This document shows, piece after piece, positions 1,039-63,573 of a stretch of DNA of 64,000 bases; position 1 is the first letter of the stretch; each line of letters starts with the position of its first letter. Origin of the DNA: Octopus sinensis (lineage: Eukaryota); assembly GCF_006345805.1 (NCBI RefSeq), contig NC_042999.1, positions 23,994,001 to 24,058,000 on the forward strand, read 5' to 3'. The position numbers were made by a program, and so were the translations under genes. The notes under the pieces were generated by a model, which saw only the letters and a program-made list of their open reading frames with translations, was not told the origin of the DNA and searched no databases.

Positions 1039-1605
1039 ATAGGCAGGTTCGTGAAACAAGTTTGTTTACAATATTTTTCAAAGCTCCAAATTCTTCAACC
1101 GAAAACGTAAATTCTGAACTTGGTTTGCTGGCGATATTTTCAATTTCTGATTTTTTAGAGTTTCGTATACCAATAGCAAACACCATCGCACCAGTTTCAC
1201 GTAGTTTTTCAGCAGCGATTTTTGTCCTGGATGGTTTGTTTGAAATTCCGTCAGTCATTAAGATGGCAATATTTTGGACATTCTTTCTGTCTCCGTATTT
1301 GTTTGTGAATGAACGGACTCTTAAACTATTCAATGCTAAATGCGTCATTGTACCTCCTTTACCATAACGGATTTTGTCAATTTTTCTGAATATTTCTTCC
1401 TTATTAAAATATGAGTTCAAGTTAAACTGATATTTAACAGAGTAGCTGAACGTAAGAACACCTACTCGGACATTTTCGGAGCCAATTGGAAAATGTTTAA
1501 TGATATCTTTTGTAAAATCTTTCATTATTTTAAAGTTAGGCGCTTTAATACTGCCAGACTCATCCAAAGCAAACATAATGTCGGCATAATTTGTTTGACA
1601 ATTCG
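1039..1605 (-). CDS. Gene C exon, VWA domain (gene continues below window start)
   Basis: tttatatttcag|CG...CTAT|gtgagt; 567 nt, phase 1-1; DIMFALDESGS, GGTMT, MTDG. Confidence 0.96.
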
Positions 1606-2236
1606 CTGAAATATAAATCAATGACATCAACGCATTATTCATTATGTCAGTATATACACATACGCACACACACACACACACACGCACGCACGCACGTACA
1701 CATCATATACATACATATACATAAATAAACATACAAGTATATATATATTGGGTCATCCCGTAAATAATGTGGGTTTTTTTTATACTTTTAATTTTCAAAA
1801 TTAAGATAAACATAGTTCTATACGTCTATCTATTTATAAGTACAAATAGACAAATGTAAACATACATATAGGTACCTTTCTGTACATACTGTAGATCCAA
1901 CTCAGTGATGGCCTCAAGTGTAGCATATGTATAAAAGAATACAAGTGGGGTTGAAAATTCACAACAGCTGTTTCGGTAGCATCTTATTAATGCATTCTTA
2001 GATTACGTCAAGACAAAAAACCGCCATTGTGCGTGTGCGTGTGTGTGTGTTTGTCTCTGTGTGTGTGTGTGTGGTGGGGGTAACATATATGATATGAATG
2101 TGGGCTAATGGATAAAGGAATTCAATCCAAATTCATAAATATTGTTTTCCTGTCTCCACGAATCTATATTATATACATGGCTGTCTTGTTCGGAGCTGAA
2201 AATGTAAGACATAATTTGTAGGAAAGTTATCTAACA

Positions 2237-2642
2237 TAGGCGCAGAAGTGGTTGTGTGGTAAGTAGCTTGCTTACCAACCACATGGTTTCGGGTTCATTC
2301 TCACTGCGTGGCACCTTGGGCAAGTGTCTTCTACTATAGCCTCGGGCCGACCAAAGCCTTGTGAGTAGATTTGGAAGACGGAAACTGAAAGAAGCCTGTC
2401 ATGTATATGTATATGTATGTATGTGTGTGTATGTGTGTTTGTGTGTCTGTGTTTGTCACCCCAGCATCGCTTGACAATCGACGGTGGTGTGTTTACGTCC
2501 CCGTAAATTAGCGGCTCGGCAATAGAGGCCTATAGAATAAGCACTAGGCTTCCAAAGAATAAGTCCTGGGGTCGACTTGCTCGACTAAAGGCGGTGCTAC
2601 AGCATGGCCACAGTCAAAGGACAGAAACAGGTAAAAGAGTAA
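2237..2642 (+). mobile_element. tRNA-type SINE family B (CORE-like, resembles Octopus OR-type SINEs from memory)
   Basis: Head ggcgcagaagtggttgtgtggtaag, CORE-like gtggcaccttgggcaagtgtc, internal (TA)/(TG) tract, aaaagagt tail. Confidence 0.85.
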
Positions 2643-3056
2643 ATTAAACAGAAATCCTACAAAGAAGATTGTCTATTTTCAATTCCTTTTGACTTGCCTC
2701 TTTCACATCATAAAGCGTGTTCCAAATTAACGTTGATTCACCTCTTTTTCTCACACTTTTCTCTATAGTTAAAAGTATCAGAGAGAATATATACCGGATC
2801 AAACTTTGTTTTACCACGAGTAAACTTTTTCAAAAGAAGGTATTGAAGTCAAGACTGCAATTCAGAACTGTTTCCATTTATAATGTGATATTATGCAGAC
2901 TTTCAGAACCTACATAAATCAAACTGATGTATATGCAATAGTGAGTGTGTCTTGAGACACACTGCTCTATCTGACAGTAACGCATCAAGTGGAAAATCAA
3001 TTGCGAACTCATATTAGAGTTATGGATTTAATTTGTCTATTGTATAGGTGTTAGTG

Positions 3057-3548
3057 TAGAGGCGCGTAGCTTAGTGGTTAGGGTGACAGCATCATGATCG
3101 TAAGATTGTGGTTTCGATTCCTGGATCAGGCGGTGCGTTCTGTTCTTAAGCAAAACACTTCATTTCACGTTGCTCCAGTTCACTCAGCTGGCAAAAATGA
3201 GTAACGCTGTGATGGACTGGCATCCCGTCAATCTGGGTAACACATACGTCATTGAAACCGGGAAACCAGGCCCATGAGCCTGGCTAGGCTTTAAAAGGGT
3301 GCATTTATTTTTGTGGAGGCGCGTGTCTTAGTGGTTAGGGTGTCAGCATCAAGATCGCAAGATTGTGGTTTCGATTCCTGGACCGGGCGACGCGTTGTGT
3401 TTCTCGTTGCTCCAGTCCACTCAGCTGGCAAAAATGAGTAACGCTGCGATGGACTGGTGTCCCATCCAGCTGGGTAACACATACGCCATTGAAACCGGGA
3501 AACTGGGCTCATGAACCTGGATAGGCTTTAAAAGGGCGCATTATTTTT
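3057..3548 (+). mobile_element. Head-to-tail dimer of tRNA-type SINE family C inside one 14-bp TSD
   Basis: Two ggcgcgt(a/g)...ttagtggttagggtg units; tataggtgttagtg at 3043-3056 and 3549-3562; body contains a V-SINE-like gatggactgg..tccc.tcca motif. Confidence 0.85.
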
Positions 3549-3619
3549 TATAGGTGTTAGTGCTTATTTGTTGTACAGCAAAATACAAAAGAACGAGTTT
3601 TGCTAATAGTGCACTTACC

Positions 3620-3836
3620 CTTTACTCTCTTTTACTCTTTTACTTGTTTCAGTCATTTGACTGTGGACATACTGGAGCACCGCCTTTAGTCGAAGAAATA
3701 AACCCCAGGACTTATTCTTTGTAAGCCTAGTACTTATTCTATCGGTCTCTTTTGCCGAACCGCTAAGTTACGGGGACGTAAACAAATCAGCATCTGTTGT
3801 CAAGCGATGTTGGAGGACAAACACAGACACAAGTAA
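3620..3836 (-). mobile_element. SINE family B, 3' half
   Basis: tttactcttttacttgtttcagtcatttgactgtgg tail and body. Confidence 0.8.
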
Positions 3837-3987
3837 AAGGGTAAAACTGTTGGCGAAGAAAAGGTGACAATGTACATCATTAATTACTATAGGAACCAGT
3901 GTATGGCTAAAAAAGGAAAAAGCGAAGAGGTTGAACTTCTCGAATAGTCTGACAGAAAATATATTTTATGTATAATATCATACTTAC

Positions 3988-61020: not shown

Positions 61021-61210
61021 ACTTACAGGTGTCTGTGACGTACTCAGCCACTTGCACGTTAATTTGACGATCAGGCTGTTCAGTTGATCGAATCAACTTG
61101 AATAATCGTCGTCGTGTCCGACGGAGAGCCAGCTGTATATGTATGTATGTATGTATGTATGTATGTATGTATGTATGTATGTATGTATGTATGTATGTAT
61201 GTATGTATGT

Positions 61211-61565
61211 CATTATTTAGTTTTATTTCAAGATTTCTTGCCAATAGAGAAATTTCTGGTTCCTAACATAGATCCAAGGATCCTTCATTGGAATTTCATC
61301 ATCAACAACTGAGTATTTTTTTGTGTGTATGTATGTATGTATATGTGCAGATTTGTATGTTTTGTTTTATGTATGTATTATCATGCGTATAGTCGCATAT
61401 CTAGACATGCTCATATATATTTAAATGATAAACTGGAAAGTTTTACAGATTTTTACAGTTCCAGTGAAGGATTGGATCTGTTGTCTTTGAATTAGCTTTC
61501 TTCTTTCTGGTTTTGAGAAGCCTAATTTCTCAAGATTGGTATCTAGGCAATGTGTTACATATTCT
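61211..61565 (-). mobile_element. RLE-type LINE 3' end inserted in (TATG)n
   Basis: LEKLGFSKPERRKLIQRQQIQSFTGTVKICKTF C-terminus; (TATG)n on both sides. Confidence 0.8.
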
Positions 61566-61805
61566 ATGTATGTATGTATGTATGTATGTATGTATGTATG
61601 TATGTATGTATGTATGTATGTATGTATGTATGTATGTATGTATGTATGTATGTACGTACATACGTACGTACGTACGTACGTACGTATATATGTATGTATG
61701 TATGTATGTATGTATGTATGTATGTACGCATGCATGCAGGCTTGCTAGCTTGCATGTATGTATGTATGTATGTATGTGTGTATAAGCAATTAAGCGTTAA
61801 CAAAC

Positions 61806-61916
61806 CTTTGGAACAATCTTTTCCAGTAAATCCTGCCTTGCATTGACAAGTGAATTCGGATCCTTCCTCGACACATATTCCATCATTTAGACAAGGATCG
61901 GAACTGCATGGAGCAA
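61806..61916 (-). CDS. Gene A exon, EGF-like repeat 3
   Basis: ttttatttacag|TT...AAAG|gtttgt; 111 nt, phase 1-1; VAPCSSDPCLNDGICVEEGSEFTCQCKAGFTGKDCSK. Confidence 0.92.
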
Positions 61917-62290
61917 CTGTAAATAAAATACACACTTATAGAAAACACCGTAAATAAAATAAATATCAATAACTATCACCTGTCGTTATTTCACTCATGT
62001 TTATATACATATTTCACTTGATTCACGGGAATACAAGTGAAGTACATCATATTACAGTGATTTGGGCATAGCAAGGGGAAATAAGATACAGACTTCCCGT
62101 AATATATTATAAGATCCATGTTATTTCATCCAACCAGGTCTTTCGCAGCACCCTTAGAGCAGGAACTTTCTGGCATCACATTGTATACATGTATAATGTA
62201 TCTACGTACACCGAAGGATTATGGTTATGGCAACTGCTTTCACAGTCCTTTGTGTGGTATAAAACGGGATTAATGAAATCAAATAATTAC

Positions 62291-62401
62291 CCAGTGAACA
62301 GTCATCTCCTCCAAAACCTGGTGGACATATACATCTATAACTTGAATCTTCCTCTTGGCATGTACCTCCATTCTTGCATGGATCACTGTGGCAAGGATCA
62401 A
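62291..62401 (-). CDS. Gene A exon, EGF-like repeat 2
   Basis: ttttcccag|TT...CTGG|gtaatt; 111 nt, phase 1-1; [37 protein letters not shown]. Confidence 0.93.
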
Positions 62402-63462
62402 CTGGGAAAAAGAAAGTTGGAGCATGACATACGTATGTCGAATCCGAAAACTCCAATAAAATGGCCATTGTTACTTTAAACATAAAATTTTTCCTCTAGA
62501 CAACCATGTTATCAGCTTTACTGAATGAAGTTTACCGGCTGCAACCTAATTCCATACAAAAACATCTCAATTCCGTTTATCTACTAAACATATAGCTGTA
62601 TAGATTTCAAAGTGATTGTCTGCCTAGCGGTTTTTATACGCATACATGTAAATGTAGATGTATGTATGCATGAGTCTGTATATATATACATAATCAAATA
62701 GGGTAATAACATAAATTATTATTACCAGTGGCCTAGCATAAAAGACGAATTAGTTATTAGACAATATATTATTCATATAGAAATATAATAAAATGCTTCC
62801 AAATAAAGAAGCGTAGTGCTAGAGACACAATATATATATATGTGTGTGTATGTATATATATATGTTTATATAATATATATGTATATATGTAGGCATATAT
62901 ATACGTATATATATATATATATATATATATATATATATATATATAGGCATATATATACGAGATAATATATATATATATATATATATATATATATATATAT
63001 ATATATATATATATATATATATATATATATATATAAAACATGTATATACGCACATTAAAGGCTGTTGGCTTCTGGCACCTATAGGATGTCAGAGACAAGA
63101 TTTTGCTGCAAGTAGATTTCATTTTGTAGAGAGAGTAAATCGGGCGATGAAAATGAAATGTCTTGGTCAAGTGCAGATTATACACTCAGTCCATAAATCT
63201 AGATTGAGAATCATTGAGGCCATACAGCTTCACTATATACGTTAGATACACAATATACACTACACACACACACACACACACATATATATATATATTTATT
63301 TACTGATAAATTTACAATACGTGCAAGTATTTAGCACATATGTAATCAATAGTAACACTAAGAACAACACGCACACATAGATATGACAAATAATATTAGG
63401 AAACAAAATTATAAAGAATGCTTTGAGATATTAAATGTAAAATATAATATAGCTTTACCCAC

Positions 63463-63573
63463 CTATCGTACAGAGAAGACCCTTGAATCCAAGTTGACAT
63501 TGACAAATAAACGTTGAACCGTTGTTGATACACGATGCTCCATTTAGACATGGTTGACTGCTACATGGATCCA
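63463..63573 (-). CDS. Gene A exon, EGF-like repeat 1 (first in window; gene starts upstream)
   Basis: ttctttgtcag|TG...ATAG|gtgggt; 111 nt, phase 1-1; VDPCSSQPCLNGASCINNGSTFICQCQLGFKGLLCTI with 6-Cys EGF spacing. Not in ORF track. Confidence 0.9.

What the first reader, a model, noticed from the sequence alone, without database searches (positions are those of the whole stretch)
1039..63573. Hidden signal-peptide exons split an apparent giant gene into a tandem cluster of three secreted VWA/EGF/VWD proteins
Seen: all exons are on the minus strand and could be chained in frame. However, two ATG-led exons encode classic signal peptides: 38222-38297 (MRFVMISAFSFLLVTLQLLQPSSSN) and 4711-4741 plus 3988-4038 (MKSIYILPLIVLCYLVNIVSS). 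Each has A at -3, a consensus phase-1 donor and a TATA-like element ~60 nt upstream. A stop-containing exon (39963-39985) precedes the first. Known: VWA+EGF (matrilin-like) and VWD-C8-TIL+EGF proteins are typical components of invertebrate mucus and adhesives, e.g. slug glue matrilin-like proteins and sea star Sfp1. Inference: this may be a co-regulated cluster for a cephalopod gel, adhesive or egg-coat secretion.
Basis: partly seen in the sequence, partly recalled or inferred. Interest (0 to 1): 0.8.

Follow-up and report, generated by a model that had tools for sequence, protein, structure and literature searches.

The report
Three annotated octopus secreted-protein genes

Summary
The window is Octopus sinensis chromosome CM016861.1, 23,994,001-24,058,000, a 100% match to the assembly.

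**Both start sites are confirmed.**
- Thirteen minus-strand exons starting at ATG 38297 translate exactly to RefSeq XP_029633229.1 (903 aa). Its layout is signal peptide, VWA, 7 EGF, VWA, EGF, VWA.
- Exons 4741-4711, 4038-3988 and 1605-1039 give exactly the first 216 residues of XP_036356789.1, XP_036356790.1 and XP_036356791.1. That protein runs signal peptide, VWA, about 21 EGF, VWD region, two PAN domains.
- The upstream gene (2934-aa product) ends inside the window after its second PAN domain.

So the three-gene split is correct, and it is already annotated.

**One detail is wrong.** The upstream gene's stop lies in a 14-nt terminal coding exon at 43003-42990. This exon is conserved in O. 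vulgaris, and paralogues have the same structure. The stop is not at 39963-39985.

**The "giant gene" risk is real in a sister species.** O. bimaculoides RefSeq XP_014774721 fuses the second and third genes. The third gene's first exon would fall in an assembly gap there.

**Function is untested.** None of the three proteins was found in the skin-mucus proteome files I could search. A paralogue with a VWA, three EGF and the start of a VWD domain is abundant in O. vulgaris skin mucus. Co-regulation was not tested.

Novelty: already known. Interest: low.

The parts
63463..63573 (-). Gene A, EGF exon (first of four in the window; the gene continues upstream of the window)
   Evidence: Phase 1-1 exon. 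Pfam finds EGF in the joined model. Collinear with paralogues P0021 and P0001. My own model, not checked against the 2934-aa RefSeq product.
62291..62401 (-). Gene A, EGF exon
61806..61916 (-). Gene A, EGF exon
58567..58677 (-). Gene A, EGF exon
57061..57308 (-). Gene A, VWD domain, first exon
   Evidence: Pfam VWD, 98 bits over the two exons. Aligns to P0021 residues 790-870.
54966..55273 (-). Gene A, VWD domain, second exon
53088..53359 (-). Gene A, C8 domain exon
   Evidence: Pfam C8, 43.3 bits against a cut-off of 23.7
51402..51592 (-). Gene A, TIL domain exon
   Evidence: Pfam TIL, 31.5 bits against a cut-off of 24.5. 53% identical to P0021.
49367..49550 (-). Gene A, cysteine-rich TILa/EGF-like exon
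   Evidence: Only weak Pfam hits (TILa 19 bits, below cut-off). 48% identical to P0021 residues 1113-1172.
47772..48005 (-). Gene A, PAN domain 1 exon
   Evidence: Pfam PAN_1, 49.7 bits. One amino-acid difference from O. vulgaris.
45846..46058 (-). Gene A, PAN domain 2 exon, phase-1 donor TACG|gtgaga
   Evidence: Pfam PAN_1, 19.1 bits, just under the cut-off of 21.4. Aligns to the second PAN of P0021. An in-frame TAA lies 12 nt past the donor, at 45834-45832.
42990..43003 (-). Gene A, coding part of the terminal exon (G|GA CGA AAC ATT TAA, giving ...FYGRNI*)
   Evidence: The RefSeq coding sequence of the 2934-aa product ends at L002:5308, which is window 42990. The same 14 nt and acceptor are present in O. 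vulgaris, where the annotated 2970-aa gene also ends. Paralogues have the same tiny terminal exon.
38222..38297 (-). Gene B exon 1: start codon and signal peptide MRFVMISAFSFLLVTLQLLQPSSSN
   Evidence: Exact N-terminus of XP_029633229.1. ATG, reading frame and donor are kept in O. vulgaris, with 1 of 76 bases different. Also kept in O. bimaculoides A0A0L8H954. It is the only strongly hydrophobic 19-residue stretch in the protein.
35978..36541 (-). Gene B, VWA domain 1
   Evidence: No amino-acid differences from O. vulgaris.
25052..33904 (-). Gene B, seven EGF exons: 33904-33791, 31714-31601, 30411-30298, 28821-28708, 28052-27939, 26797-26687, 25165-25052
   Evidence: Exact translation to XP_029633229.1. 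Pfam EGF, 8 stretches.
23376..23936 (-). Gene B, VWA domain 2
22312..22443 (-). Gene B, eighth EGF exon
17429..17989 (-). Gene B, VWA domain 3
   Evidence: Five amino-acid differences from O. vulgaris.
16124..16146 (-). Gene B, coding part of the terminal exon (TIKSQTG, then TGA)
   Evidence: Conserved with its stop codon in O. bimaculoides. An AATAAA lies 288 nt downstream.
4711..4741 (-). Gene C exon 1: start codon and MKSIYILPLI(V)
   Evidence: Exact N-terminus of XP_036356789.1, XP_036356790.1 and XP_036356791.1
3988..4038 (-). Gene C exon 2: rest of the signal peptide and the cleavage region (VLCYLVNIVSSKSLESK)
   Evidence: Conserved in O. bimaculoides, 87.5% identity with its flanks. An Argonauta hians partial protein has a stretch of the same length, ending in polar residues, before its VWA domain.
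1039..1605 (-). Gene C, VWA domain exon; the gene continues beyond the low end of the window

Best explanation
The window contains the 3' part of one gene, one complete gene and the 5' part of a third. All three lie head to tail on the minus strand of Octopus sinensis chromosome CM016861.1, and all encode secreted, disulfide-rich, multi-domain extracellular proteins.

**Gene A** (RefSeq product of 2934 aa). In the window it runs four EGF domains, a VWD-C8-TIL unit, a cysteine-rich module and two PAN domains. It ends in a 14-nt terminal coding exon at 43003-42990.

**Gene B** (XP_029633229.1, 903 aa). It starts at ATG 38297 with a signal peptide in a single exon. It then runs VWA, seven EGF, VWA, EGF, VWA and a 7-residue tail, with its stop at 16126-16124.

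**Gene C** (XP_036356789.1 and its isoforms). It starts at ATG 4741 with a signal peptide split over two small exons, followed by VWA. Beyond the window it continues with about 21 EGF domains, a VWD region collinear with gene A's VWD-C8-TIL, and two PAN domains.

**Why the exons look like one giant gene.** Nearly every domain is one exon bounded by phase-1 introns. Each gene's signal-peptide exon also ends in a phase-1 donor. The family could therefore grow by exon and gene duplication, and exons of neighbouring genes can be joined in frame by eye or by a gene predictor.

**Shown:** the gene boundaries, the domain content, and N-terminal hydrophobic signal sequences with no other membrane-type segment.

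**Inferred from general knowledge of the domains:**
- The VWA domains all carry an intact DxSxS metal-site motif and bind partners through a metal ion.
- The VWD-C8-TIL unit of A and C supports disulfide-linked multimerisation, as in von Willebrand factor and gel-forming mucins.
- The products are therefore extracellular matrix or mucus-type structural or adhesive proteins.

Tissue and co-regulation are unknown.
For: **Identity of the window.** It is 100% identical over 42,174 bases to GCA_006345805.1 CM016861.1.

**Annotated genes there.** The 2934-aa product's coding sequence ends at window 42990. The 903-aa product's coding sequence spans window 38297-16124. Nothing else is called in the 10 kb below it.

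**Gene models.**
- Thirteen exons with canonical AG/GT sites translate exactly to XP_029633229.1.
- Three exons give the exact first 216 residues of XP_036356789.1, XP_036356790.1 and XP_036356791.1.

**Orthologue.** The O. bimaculoides orthologue A0A0L8H954 has the same 903-aa length, signal peptide and tail, and is 88% identical.

**Constraint.** Gene B exons differ from O. vulgaris at 36 of 2689 bases (10 amino acids), against roughly 5-6% in the introns. The first exon keeps its ATG, reading frame and donor.

**End of gene A.**
- Paralogues P0021/P0163, P0144, P0024 and P0143 all end a few residues after the second PAN domain.
- Two of them checked in DNA have a tiny terminal exon 1.9-3 kb further on.
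- Gene A's terminal exon is identical in O. vulgaris, where the local annotation also ends.

**Domains and topology.**
- Pfam finds three VWA plus eight EGF stretches in B; VWA, 21 EGF stretches and VWD in C; and VWD, C8, TIL and PAN in A.
- Each of B and C has one hydrophobic 19-residue stretch, at the N-terminus (Kyte-Doolittle mean 1.87 and 2.01). The next best stretch scores 1.19 or less.
Against: - No transcript, 5'-end or proteomic data for these three genes could be examined here. RefSeq models are themselves computational predictions.
- The 2934-aa product of gene A could not be retrieved. Only its coding end and product length are checked; my gene A exons above 48297 rest on reading-frame continuity and collinearity with paralogues.
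- O. bimaculoides RefSeq XP_014774721.1 and .2 join B to C, so read-through transcripts cannot be fully excluded.
- SignalP was not available.
- The functional part (metal-dependent binding, multimerisation, matrix or mucus role) is inference from domain families.
- The accessions and sequence strings of A, B and C were not found in the two skin-mucus proteome supplements. Some of those files are truncated.
Confidence: 0.88

Rival explanations
1. There is one giant gene, or B and C form one gene. The signal-peptide-like exons would then be chance reading frames or rarely used alternative first exons, and the main transcript would splice the second PAN domain to VWA1 and VWA3 to VWA4.
For: - All the junctions are phase-compatible.
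- O. bimaculoides RefSeq XP_014774721.1 (2657 aa) and .2 (2175 aa) do run from gene B into gene C. They pass through a bridge exon that matches window 12597-12806 and skip C's first exon.
Against: - O. sinensis RefSeq separates the genes.
- The O. bimaculoides fusion has a simple cause. A 2.5-kb run of N (L004 20931-23479) ends 64 nt upstream of C exon 2. In O. sinensis, exon 1 lies 673 nt upstream of exon 2, so in O. bimaculoides it would fall inside that gap.
- By my reconstruction of the fused model's junction, it needs a GTCTGG donor inside B's last exon. In O. sinensis that site reads GACTGG.
- B's stop-bearing terminal exon is conserved in two species, and A's in O. vulgaris.
- The earlier O. 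bimaculoides model A0A0L8H954 is a stand-alone 903-aa protein.
- No family member in hand carries anything after the second PAN domain.
Confidence: 0.05
2. The genes are separate, but gene A ends differently from the RefSeq model. Either it ends at the reader's exon 39985-39963, or the second PAN exon is read through without splicing to the in-frame TAA at 45834-45832 (...FYGEIF*).
For: - 39985-39963 follows a good acceptor and is in phase.
- The read-through stop lies only 12 nt past the donor and is conserved in O. vulgaris.
- AATAAA/ATTAAA motifs follow both candidate ends.
Against: - Two independent annotations, O. sinensis RefSeq and the O. vulgaris annotation, end the coding sequence at the 43003-42990 exon.
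- LOC115209189 and O. bimaculoides gene C both splice from the second PAN exon to a tiny terminal exon.
Confidence: 0.08
3. The three genes form a co-regulated cluster that makes one secretion (skin or sucker mucus, adhesive, or egg coat).
For: - The three genes sit in tandem on the same strand, encode secreted proteins and share a domain vocabulary.
- A paralogue, A0AA36ANY5 (1232 aa), starts with VWA, three EGF and the start of a VWD domain. It is listed in O. vulgaris skin mucus with figures I read as 42% coverage, 46 peptides and 124 spectra (supplement of PMC11431876).
- VWD and VWA domains are enriched in that mucus proteome (PMC10138644, Table 3).
- A 'zonadhesin-like' LOC115209190 is listed there. 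Its number is adjacent to LOC115209189, the opposite-strand paralogue about 290 kb from the window.
- A ZAN-annotated transcript rises in the O. maya oviducal gland at fertilisation (PMC8976471).
Against: - No expression data for A, B or C were available.
- Their accessions and diagnostic peptide strings are absent from both mucus supplements searched.
- No paper in the library cites them.
- A, C and LOC115209189 are only 42-45% identical over their shared VWD-to-PAN portions. These are old duplicates that could have diverged in tissue use.
Confidence: 0.2

Closest known systems
[quoted passage not shown]
   Same: Identical.
   Different: The RefSeq names 'notch' and 'fibropellin' reflect only the EGF repeats.
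Octopod paralogues with (VWA/EGF)n, VWD-C8-TIL and two PAN domains: O. sinensis LOC115209189 (P0021/P0163), O. vulgaris P0144 and P0024, O. bimaculoides P0001 and P0142
   Same: The same domain order as A and C, and the same short C-terminus a few residues after the second PAN domain. In the two paralogues checked in DNA (LOC115209189 and O. bimaculoides gene C), the second PAN exon is followed by a tiny terminal coding exon, as in A. They are 42-45% identical to A and C over the VWD-to-PAN portion.
   Different: The numbers of VWA and EGF units differ. LOC115209189 lies about 290 kb away on the opposite strand, and P0024 is 64 Mb away on the same chromosome.
Matrilins (vertebrate proteins with VWA and EGF domains plus a coiled coil)
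   Same: Gene B alternates VWA domains with EGF repeats behind a signal peptide. Its O. bimaculoides fragment is named matrilin-2-like.
   Different: B ends 7 residues after its third VWA domain and has no C-terminal coiled-coil oligomerisation module. It has three VWA domains. Matrilins have one or two (from my own knowledge).
Proteins with the VWD-C8-TIL unit: von Willebrand factor, gel-forming mucins, zonadhesin, IgGFc-binding protein, alpha-tectorin
   Same: A has one VWD-C8-TIL unit that passes the Pfam cut-offs. C passes for VWD and is collinear with A over the rest. Fish and bird zonadhesin-like, FCGBP and tectorin-like proteins are the nearest non-cephalopod hits to that part.
   Different: There is only one such unit. 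Pfam found no MAM, cystine-knot or membrane-spanning segment, and I saw no Pro/Thr/Ser-rich mucin stretch. N-terminal VWA/EGF arrays and two C-terminal PAN domains are not part of those families.
   Same: A shared domain vocabulary (VWA, EGF, VWD, C8, TIL) in secreted proteins. This is from recall and was not tested.
   Different: No sequence comparison was made. Neither appeared among the listed database hits.

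Membership tests
Secreted protein with a cleavable N-terminal signal peptide | Short positively charged start, hydrophobic core of about 10-17 residues, polar end with small residues at -3 and -1, and no other membrane-spanning segment | tested here: met
   - B reads MR + FVMISAFSFLLVTLQLL + QPSSS.
- C reads MK + SIYILPLIVLCYLVNIV + SS.
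- The N-terminal 19-residue stretch is the only strongly hydrophobic one (Kyte-Doolittle mean 1.87 and 2.01; the next best is 1.19 or less).
- This was judged by inspection and hydropathy only. SignalP was not available.
Matrilin | One or two VWA domains joined by EGF-like repeats | tested here: met
   Pfam finds three VWA stretches and eight EGF stretches in the order VWA, 7 EGF, VWA, EGF, VWA
Matrilin | C-terminal alpha-helical coiled-coil oligomerisation domain | tested here: not met
   The protein ends ...MLERICE-TIKSQTG*, 7 residues after the third VWA domain. O. bimaculoides has the same tail, SIKSQSG.
VWA domain with a metal-ion-dependent adhesion site | DxSxS motif at the start of the domain, plus downstream Thr and Asp | tested here: met
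   The motif reads DESSS, DESGS, DYSKS and DESGS in the four VWA domains. The conserved TH(K/L)AL and (I/M/L)(T/S)DG stretches are visible in the translated sequences. Metal binding itself cannot be tested here.
vWF/mucin-type D assembly | Contiguous VWD, C8 and TIL modules | tested here: met
   Gene A scores VWD 98.3 bits, C8 43.3 bits and TIL 31.5 bits, all above the Pfam cut-offs. Gene C scores VWD 97.9 bits and is collinear with A over the rest.
Gel-forming mucin | Long Pro/Thr/Ser-rich O-glycosylated domains and a C-terminal cystine knot | tested here: not met
   Pfam found no cystine-knot family, and I saw no Pro/Thr/Ser-rich stretch in A (window part), B or C. The upstream part of gene A was not seen.
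Zonadhesin | MAM domains, several tandem VWD units, a membrane anchor | tested here: not met
   One VWD only, no MAM hit, and no second hydrophobic segment
Notch (the RefSeq name of gene C) | LNR repeats, a membrane-spanning segment and ankyrin repeats in addition to EGF repeats | tested here: not met
   Pfam on XP_036356789.1 gives only EGF-type, VWA and VWD families. No hydrophobic segment follows the signal peptide.
Tandem, co-regulated gene cluster | Shared expression pattern of the neighbouring genes | not testable with these tools
   No expression data are available. Only adjacency and shared strand are shown.

The most novel reading that the evidence does not exclude
A, B and C may belong to an octopod-expanded family of secreted (VWA/EGF)n, VWD-C8-TIL, PAN-PAN proteins that together build a secreted gel or adhesive such as skin or sucker mucus or egg-stalk cement. 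In that reading A and C would form disulfide-linked multimers through their VWD units. B has three metal-site VWA domains and no VWD unit, and would act as a cross-linker. The three neighbours would be co-expressed.
Probability: 0.12. Interest if true: 0.45.

Novelty: already known. Interest (0 to 1): 0.15.

Why it matters
For the scan, this shows that reading raw sequence alone can recover true gene boundaries in a run of phase-compatible domain exons. Biologically nothing new is established, because the three genes and their signal peptides are already in the RefSeq annotation of this genome.

There is a small practical gain for curators:
- The O. bimaculoides RefSeq 'zonadhesin' XP_014774721 is probably a fusion of two genes, caused by an assembly gap where the third gene's first exon should lie.
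- The O. vulgaris annotation breaks the middle gene into two faulty models that lack the signal peptide.
- The names 'notch homolog' and 'fibropellin' for the third gene are misleading.

The family itself may deserve study. It is large, seems restricted to octopods in its full architecture, and has at least one member abundant in skin mucus. That would need expression and proteomic data.

Tried and rejected
1. **Read-through stop for gene A.** I first thought gene A simply ran through the donor of its second PAN exon to the TAA at 45834-45832. The tail length matched P0021. I dropped this when the RefSeq and O. vulgaris coding ends both mapped to 42990, and the paralogue's GFSE* tail proved to lie in a separate tiny exon.

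2. **First protein search.** A search with the whole gene B model was swamped by EGF-rich notch, jagged and crumbs proteins and did not list the window's own product. The exact RefSeq proteins turned up only later, through a cluster listing.

3. **Gene A's product.** Every protein listed by the searches is shorter than about 1560 aa, so the 2934-aa product was never retrieved. That the search is limited by length is my inference.

4. **Isoform look-up.** XP_036356789.1 is not on record by exact look-up, because only the longest isoform is stored.

6. **Gene C exon 1 in O. bimaculoides.** There was no match. The region where it should lie is a run of N.

7. **Literature.** No paper holds the accessions or LOC numbers. 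Searches on octopus plus zonadhesin, matrilin, sucker or oviducal gland gave only family-level or name-level mentions. I could not establish whether LOC115209190, the 'zonadhesin-like' protein in skin mucus, is one of the window's genes.

8. **RNA genes.** Rfam and tRNA scans of the window found nothing.

9. **Large intronic or intergenic reading frames.** Frames at 48276-48800, 40723-41049, 12997-13278, 13843-14235 and the bridge region 12597-12806 gave no Pfam match.

Full report
**What the window is.** The sequence is AT-rich and full of (TA)n and (CATA)n repeats, with domain-sized reading frames only on the minus strand. A locus fetched for one of the encoded proteins matches window 48297-6124 at 100% over 42,174 bases. 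That locus is Octopus sinensis assembly GCA_006345805.1, chromosome CM016861.1, positions 24,000,124-24,042,297. Extrapolating from that match, the window is chromosome positions 23,994,001-24,058,000. The orthologous O. vulgaris region (OX597816.1, about 25.57-25.60 Mb) is roughly 91-96% identical over most aligned non-coding stretches.

**Checking the observation.**
- The exon at 38297-38222 reads ATG...MRFVMISAFSFLLVTLQLLQPSSSN, followed by ACT|gtaagt.
- Exons 4741-4711 and 4038-3988 join to MKSIYILPLIVLCYLVNIVSSKSLESK. Their phase-1 donors are gtgagt and gtaagt.
- Both ATGs have A at -3.
- TATA-like motifs lie 50-67 nt upstream. About 17-18% of all positions in this window have one in the 40-80 nt range, so this adds little.
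- A window-wide scan looked for an ATG with a purine at -3, a hydrophobic core and a good phase-1 donor. On the minus strand it returned only the 38297 exon. The plus strand gave one non-repeat hit as a control.
- Nearly all domain exons are phase 1-1, so chaining across gene boundaries does stay in frame.

**What the genes are.**
- *Gene B.* I built it from canonical splice sites as 13 exons running from 38297 to a short terminal exon at 16146-16124 (TIKSQTG, then TGA). [quoted passage not shown]
- *Gene C.* The three exons in the window give the exact first 216 residues of XP_036356789.1, XP_036356790.1 and XP_036356791.1. These are three isoforms of one gene, named 'neurogenic locus notch homolog protein 1' and 'fibropellin-1'.
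- *The local annotation.* It lists a 2934-aa product whose coding sequence ends at window 42990. Gene B spans 38297-16124. Nothing further is called down to 6124.

**Domain content.** Pfam gives the following.
- B has three VWA and eight EGF stretches.
- C has VWA, 21 EGF stretches and VWD.
- The window part of A has four EGF, VWD (98 bits), C8 (43 bits), TIL (31.5 bits), a weakly TILa/EGF-like module, a first PAN domain (49.7 bits) and a second PAN domain (19.1 bits, just under the cut-off of 21.4).

B and C each have a single strongly hydrophobic stretch, at the N-terminus, and no other membrane-type segment. All four VWA domains keep the DxSxS metal-site motif, which is visible directly in the sequences.

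**Where gene A ends.** I first favoured simple read-through of the second PAN exon's donor to a TAA at 45834-45832. Neither is the annotated end.
- The RefSeq coding sequence ends at 42990. There, an exon with a good acceptor (tttttcag|GACGAAACATTTAA) completes ...FYG-RNI-stop in phase with the second PAN exon's donor.
- The same 14 bases and acceptor are present in O. vulgaris, whose independent annotation ends its 2970-aa gene at that point.
- In LOC115209189 and in O. bimaculoides gene C, the second PAN exon is likewise followed, 1.9-3 kb later, by a terminal exon carrying only a few coding bases.
It diverges from O. vulgaris at intron-like levels.

**Independent support for the split.**
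- Every related octopus protein I could read ends a few residues after its second PAN domain. This covers P0021/P0163, P0144, P0024 and P0143.
- The O. bimaculoides protein A0A0L8H954 is a stand-alone 903-aa orthologue of B. It has the same signal peptide and tail and is 88% identical.
- B's exons differ from O. vulgaris at 36 of 2689 bases (10 amino acids), against about 5-6% in the introns. The first exon keeps its ATG, frame and donor, with one substitution.
- B's terminal exon, with its stop, is conserved in O. bimaculoides.
- An Argonauta hians partial protein is 58% identical to C's VWA domain. Before that domain it has an 18-residue stretch (ISAFISVLDSQPAYSEEG), matching C exon 2 in length and polar end, and after it a run of EGF repeats.

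**The 'giant gene' is real elsewhere.** O. bimaculoides RefSeq XP_014774721.1 (2657 aa) and .2 (2175 aa) run from B straight into C. They pass through a bridge exon that corresponds to window 12597-12806, and they enter C at its second exon, omitting MKSIYILPLI. Three observations suggest this is an artefact.
- A 2.5-kb run of N in that assembly ends 64 nt upstream of C exon 2. In O. sinensis, exon 1 lies 673 nt upstream of exon 2, so it would fall inside the gap.
- By my reconstruction of the junction, the fused model needs a GTCTGG donor inside B's last exon. The O. sinensis sequence there is GACTGG.
- The current O. bimaculoides annotation also cuts B's front half off as a 442-aa 'matrilin-2-like' protein.

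In O. vulgaris, B is split into two models. The first is 290 aa, starts at an intronic ATG and continues through frame-shifted EGF exons. The second is 377 aa with two VWA domains. Neither has the signal peptide.

**Family and neighbourhood.**
- A, C and LOC115209189 share the layout (VWA/EGF)n, VWD-C8-TIL, cysteine-rich module, PAN, PAN. They are 42-45% identical over the VWD-to-PAN portion, so they are old duplicates.
- The four VWA domains of B and C are 42-48% identical to each other.
- LOC115209189 lies about 290 kb from the window on the opposite strand. Its O. vulgaris orthologue sits at a similar offset of about 340 kb. P0024 is 64 Mb away on the same chromosome.
- Outside octopods, hits to the A tail cover only the VWD-C8-TIL part: fish zonadhesin-like, FCGBP and tectorin-like proteins.
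- B resembles matrilins in alternating VWA and EGF domains but lacks their defining C-terminal coiled coil.
- C is not a Notch. It has no LNR, ankyrin or membrane-spanning segment.

**Function.** Nothing here tests it.
- From the domains, I infer secreted, disulfide-rich matrix or mucus-type proteins. The VWA domains would bind partners through a metal ion. The VWD unit would allow multimerisation.
- No paper in the library cites the accessions.
- They and six diagnostic sequence strings are absent from the supplements of two O. vulgaris skin-mucus proteome papers. Some of those files are truncated.
- At family level there is support. A paralogue, A0AA36ANY5 (1232 aa), begins with VWA, three EGF and the start of a VWD domain. 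It is listed in skin mucus with figures I read as 42% coverage, 46 peptides and 124 spectra (PMC11431876 supplement).
- VWD and VWA domains are enriched in that proteome (PMC10138644).
- A 'zonadhesin-like' LOC115209190 is also listed there. I could not establish which gene it is.
- Co-regulation of A, B and C remains a guess.

**Verdict.** The three-gene interpretation is correct and matches the public annotation exactly. The proposed stop exon is wrong. The functional idea is untested. This is an already known feature of low interest. Its by-products are a likely fused RefSeq model in O. bimaculoides and faulty models in O. vulgaris.

Noticed in passing
L004 (O. bimaculoides CM046603.1) 10934-23718; corresponds to window 16146-3988: RefSeq XP_014774721.1 and .2 ('zonadhesin') fuse the orthologues of genes B and C through a bridge exon and skip C's first exon. 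A 2.5-kb run of N (L004 20931-23479) covers the place where that exon should be. The fused model is probably an artefact of the assembly gap.
   Followed up: yes
L001 (O. vulgaris OX597816.1) 10001-19514 and 24334 onward; corresponds to window 36560-27900 and 23930 onward: The O. vulgaris annotation splits gene B into two models. The first is a 290-aa 'hypothetical protein' that starts at an intronic ATG and continues through EGF exons in the wrong frame. The second is 377 aa with two VWA domains. Neither has the signal-peptide exon, although that exon is intact in the DNA.
   Followed up: partly
window 45832-45846: An in-frame TAA lies 12 nt past the donor of gene A's second PAN exon and is conserved in O. 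vulgaris. An unspliced transcript would give ...FYGEIF* instead of ...FYGRNI*. This could be an alternative 3' end.
   Followed up: partly
window 19705-21946: A 2.2-kb (TGTA)n microsatellite (about 560 copies) sits in the intron between B's last EGF exon and its third VWA exon. It causes the GC-skew spike at 20-22 kb and spurious reading frames of up to 510 aa on both strands.
   Followed up: yes
window 8034-8455, 10960-11371, 15278-15682, 29033-29454 and shorter copies (e.g. 239-593, 16492-16792): An interspersed repeat of about 420 bp is present in both orientations. Copies are about 90% identical to each other. No tRNA or Rfam match was found in the window.
   Followed up: partly
window 17429-17989 compared with 35978-36541 and 23376-23936: Between O. 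sinensis and O. vulgaris, the third VWA domain has 13 base and 5 amino-acid differences. The first and second have 3 and 1 base differences and no amino-acid change. The last VWA domain seems less constrained.
   Followed up: no
Supplements of PMC10138644 and PMC11431876 (not in the window): Two octopus skin-mucus proteomes list relatives. One is a 'zonadhesin-like' LOC115209190 (A0A7E6ERF9), whose number is adjacent to LOC115209189, the opposite-strand paralogue about 290 kb from the window. The other is an abundant paralogue, A0AA36ANY5. Whether LOC115209190 is gene A or C of this window could not be determined.
   Followed up: partly
window 1039-4741 and beyond (gene C): RefSeq names isoforms of this one gene 'neurogenic locus notch homolog protein 1' and 'fibropellin-1'. 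The protein has no Notch-specific domains. The isoforms seen differ in length by 37 or 74 residues, which would equal one or two EGF units.
   Followed up: partly
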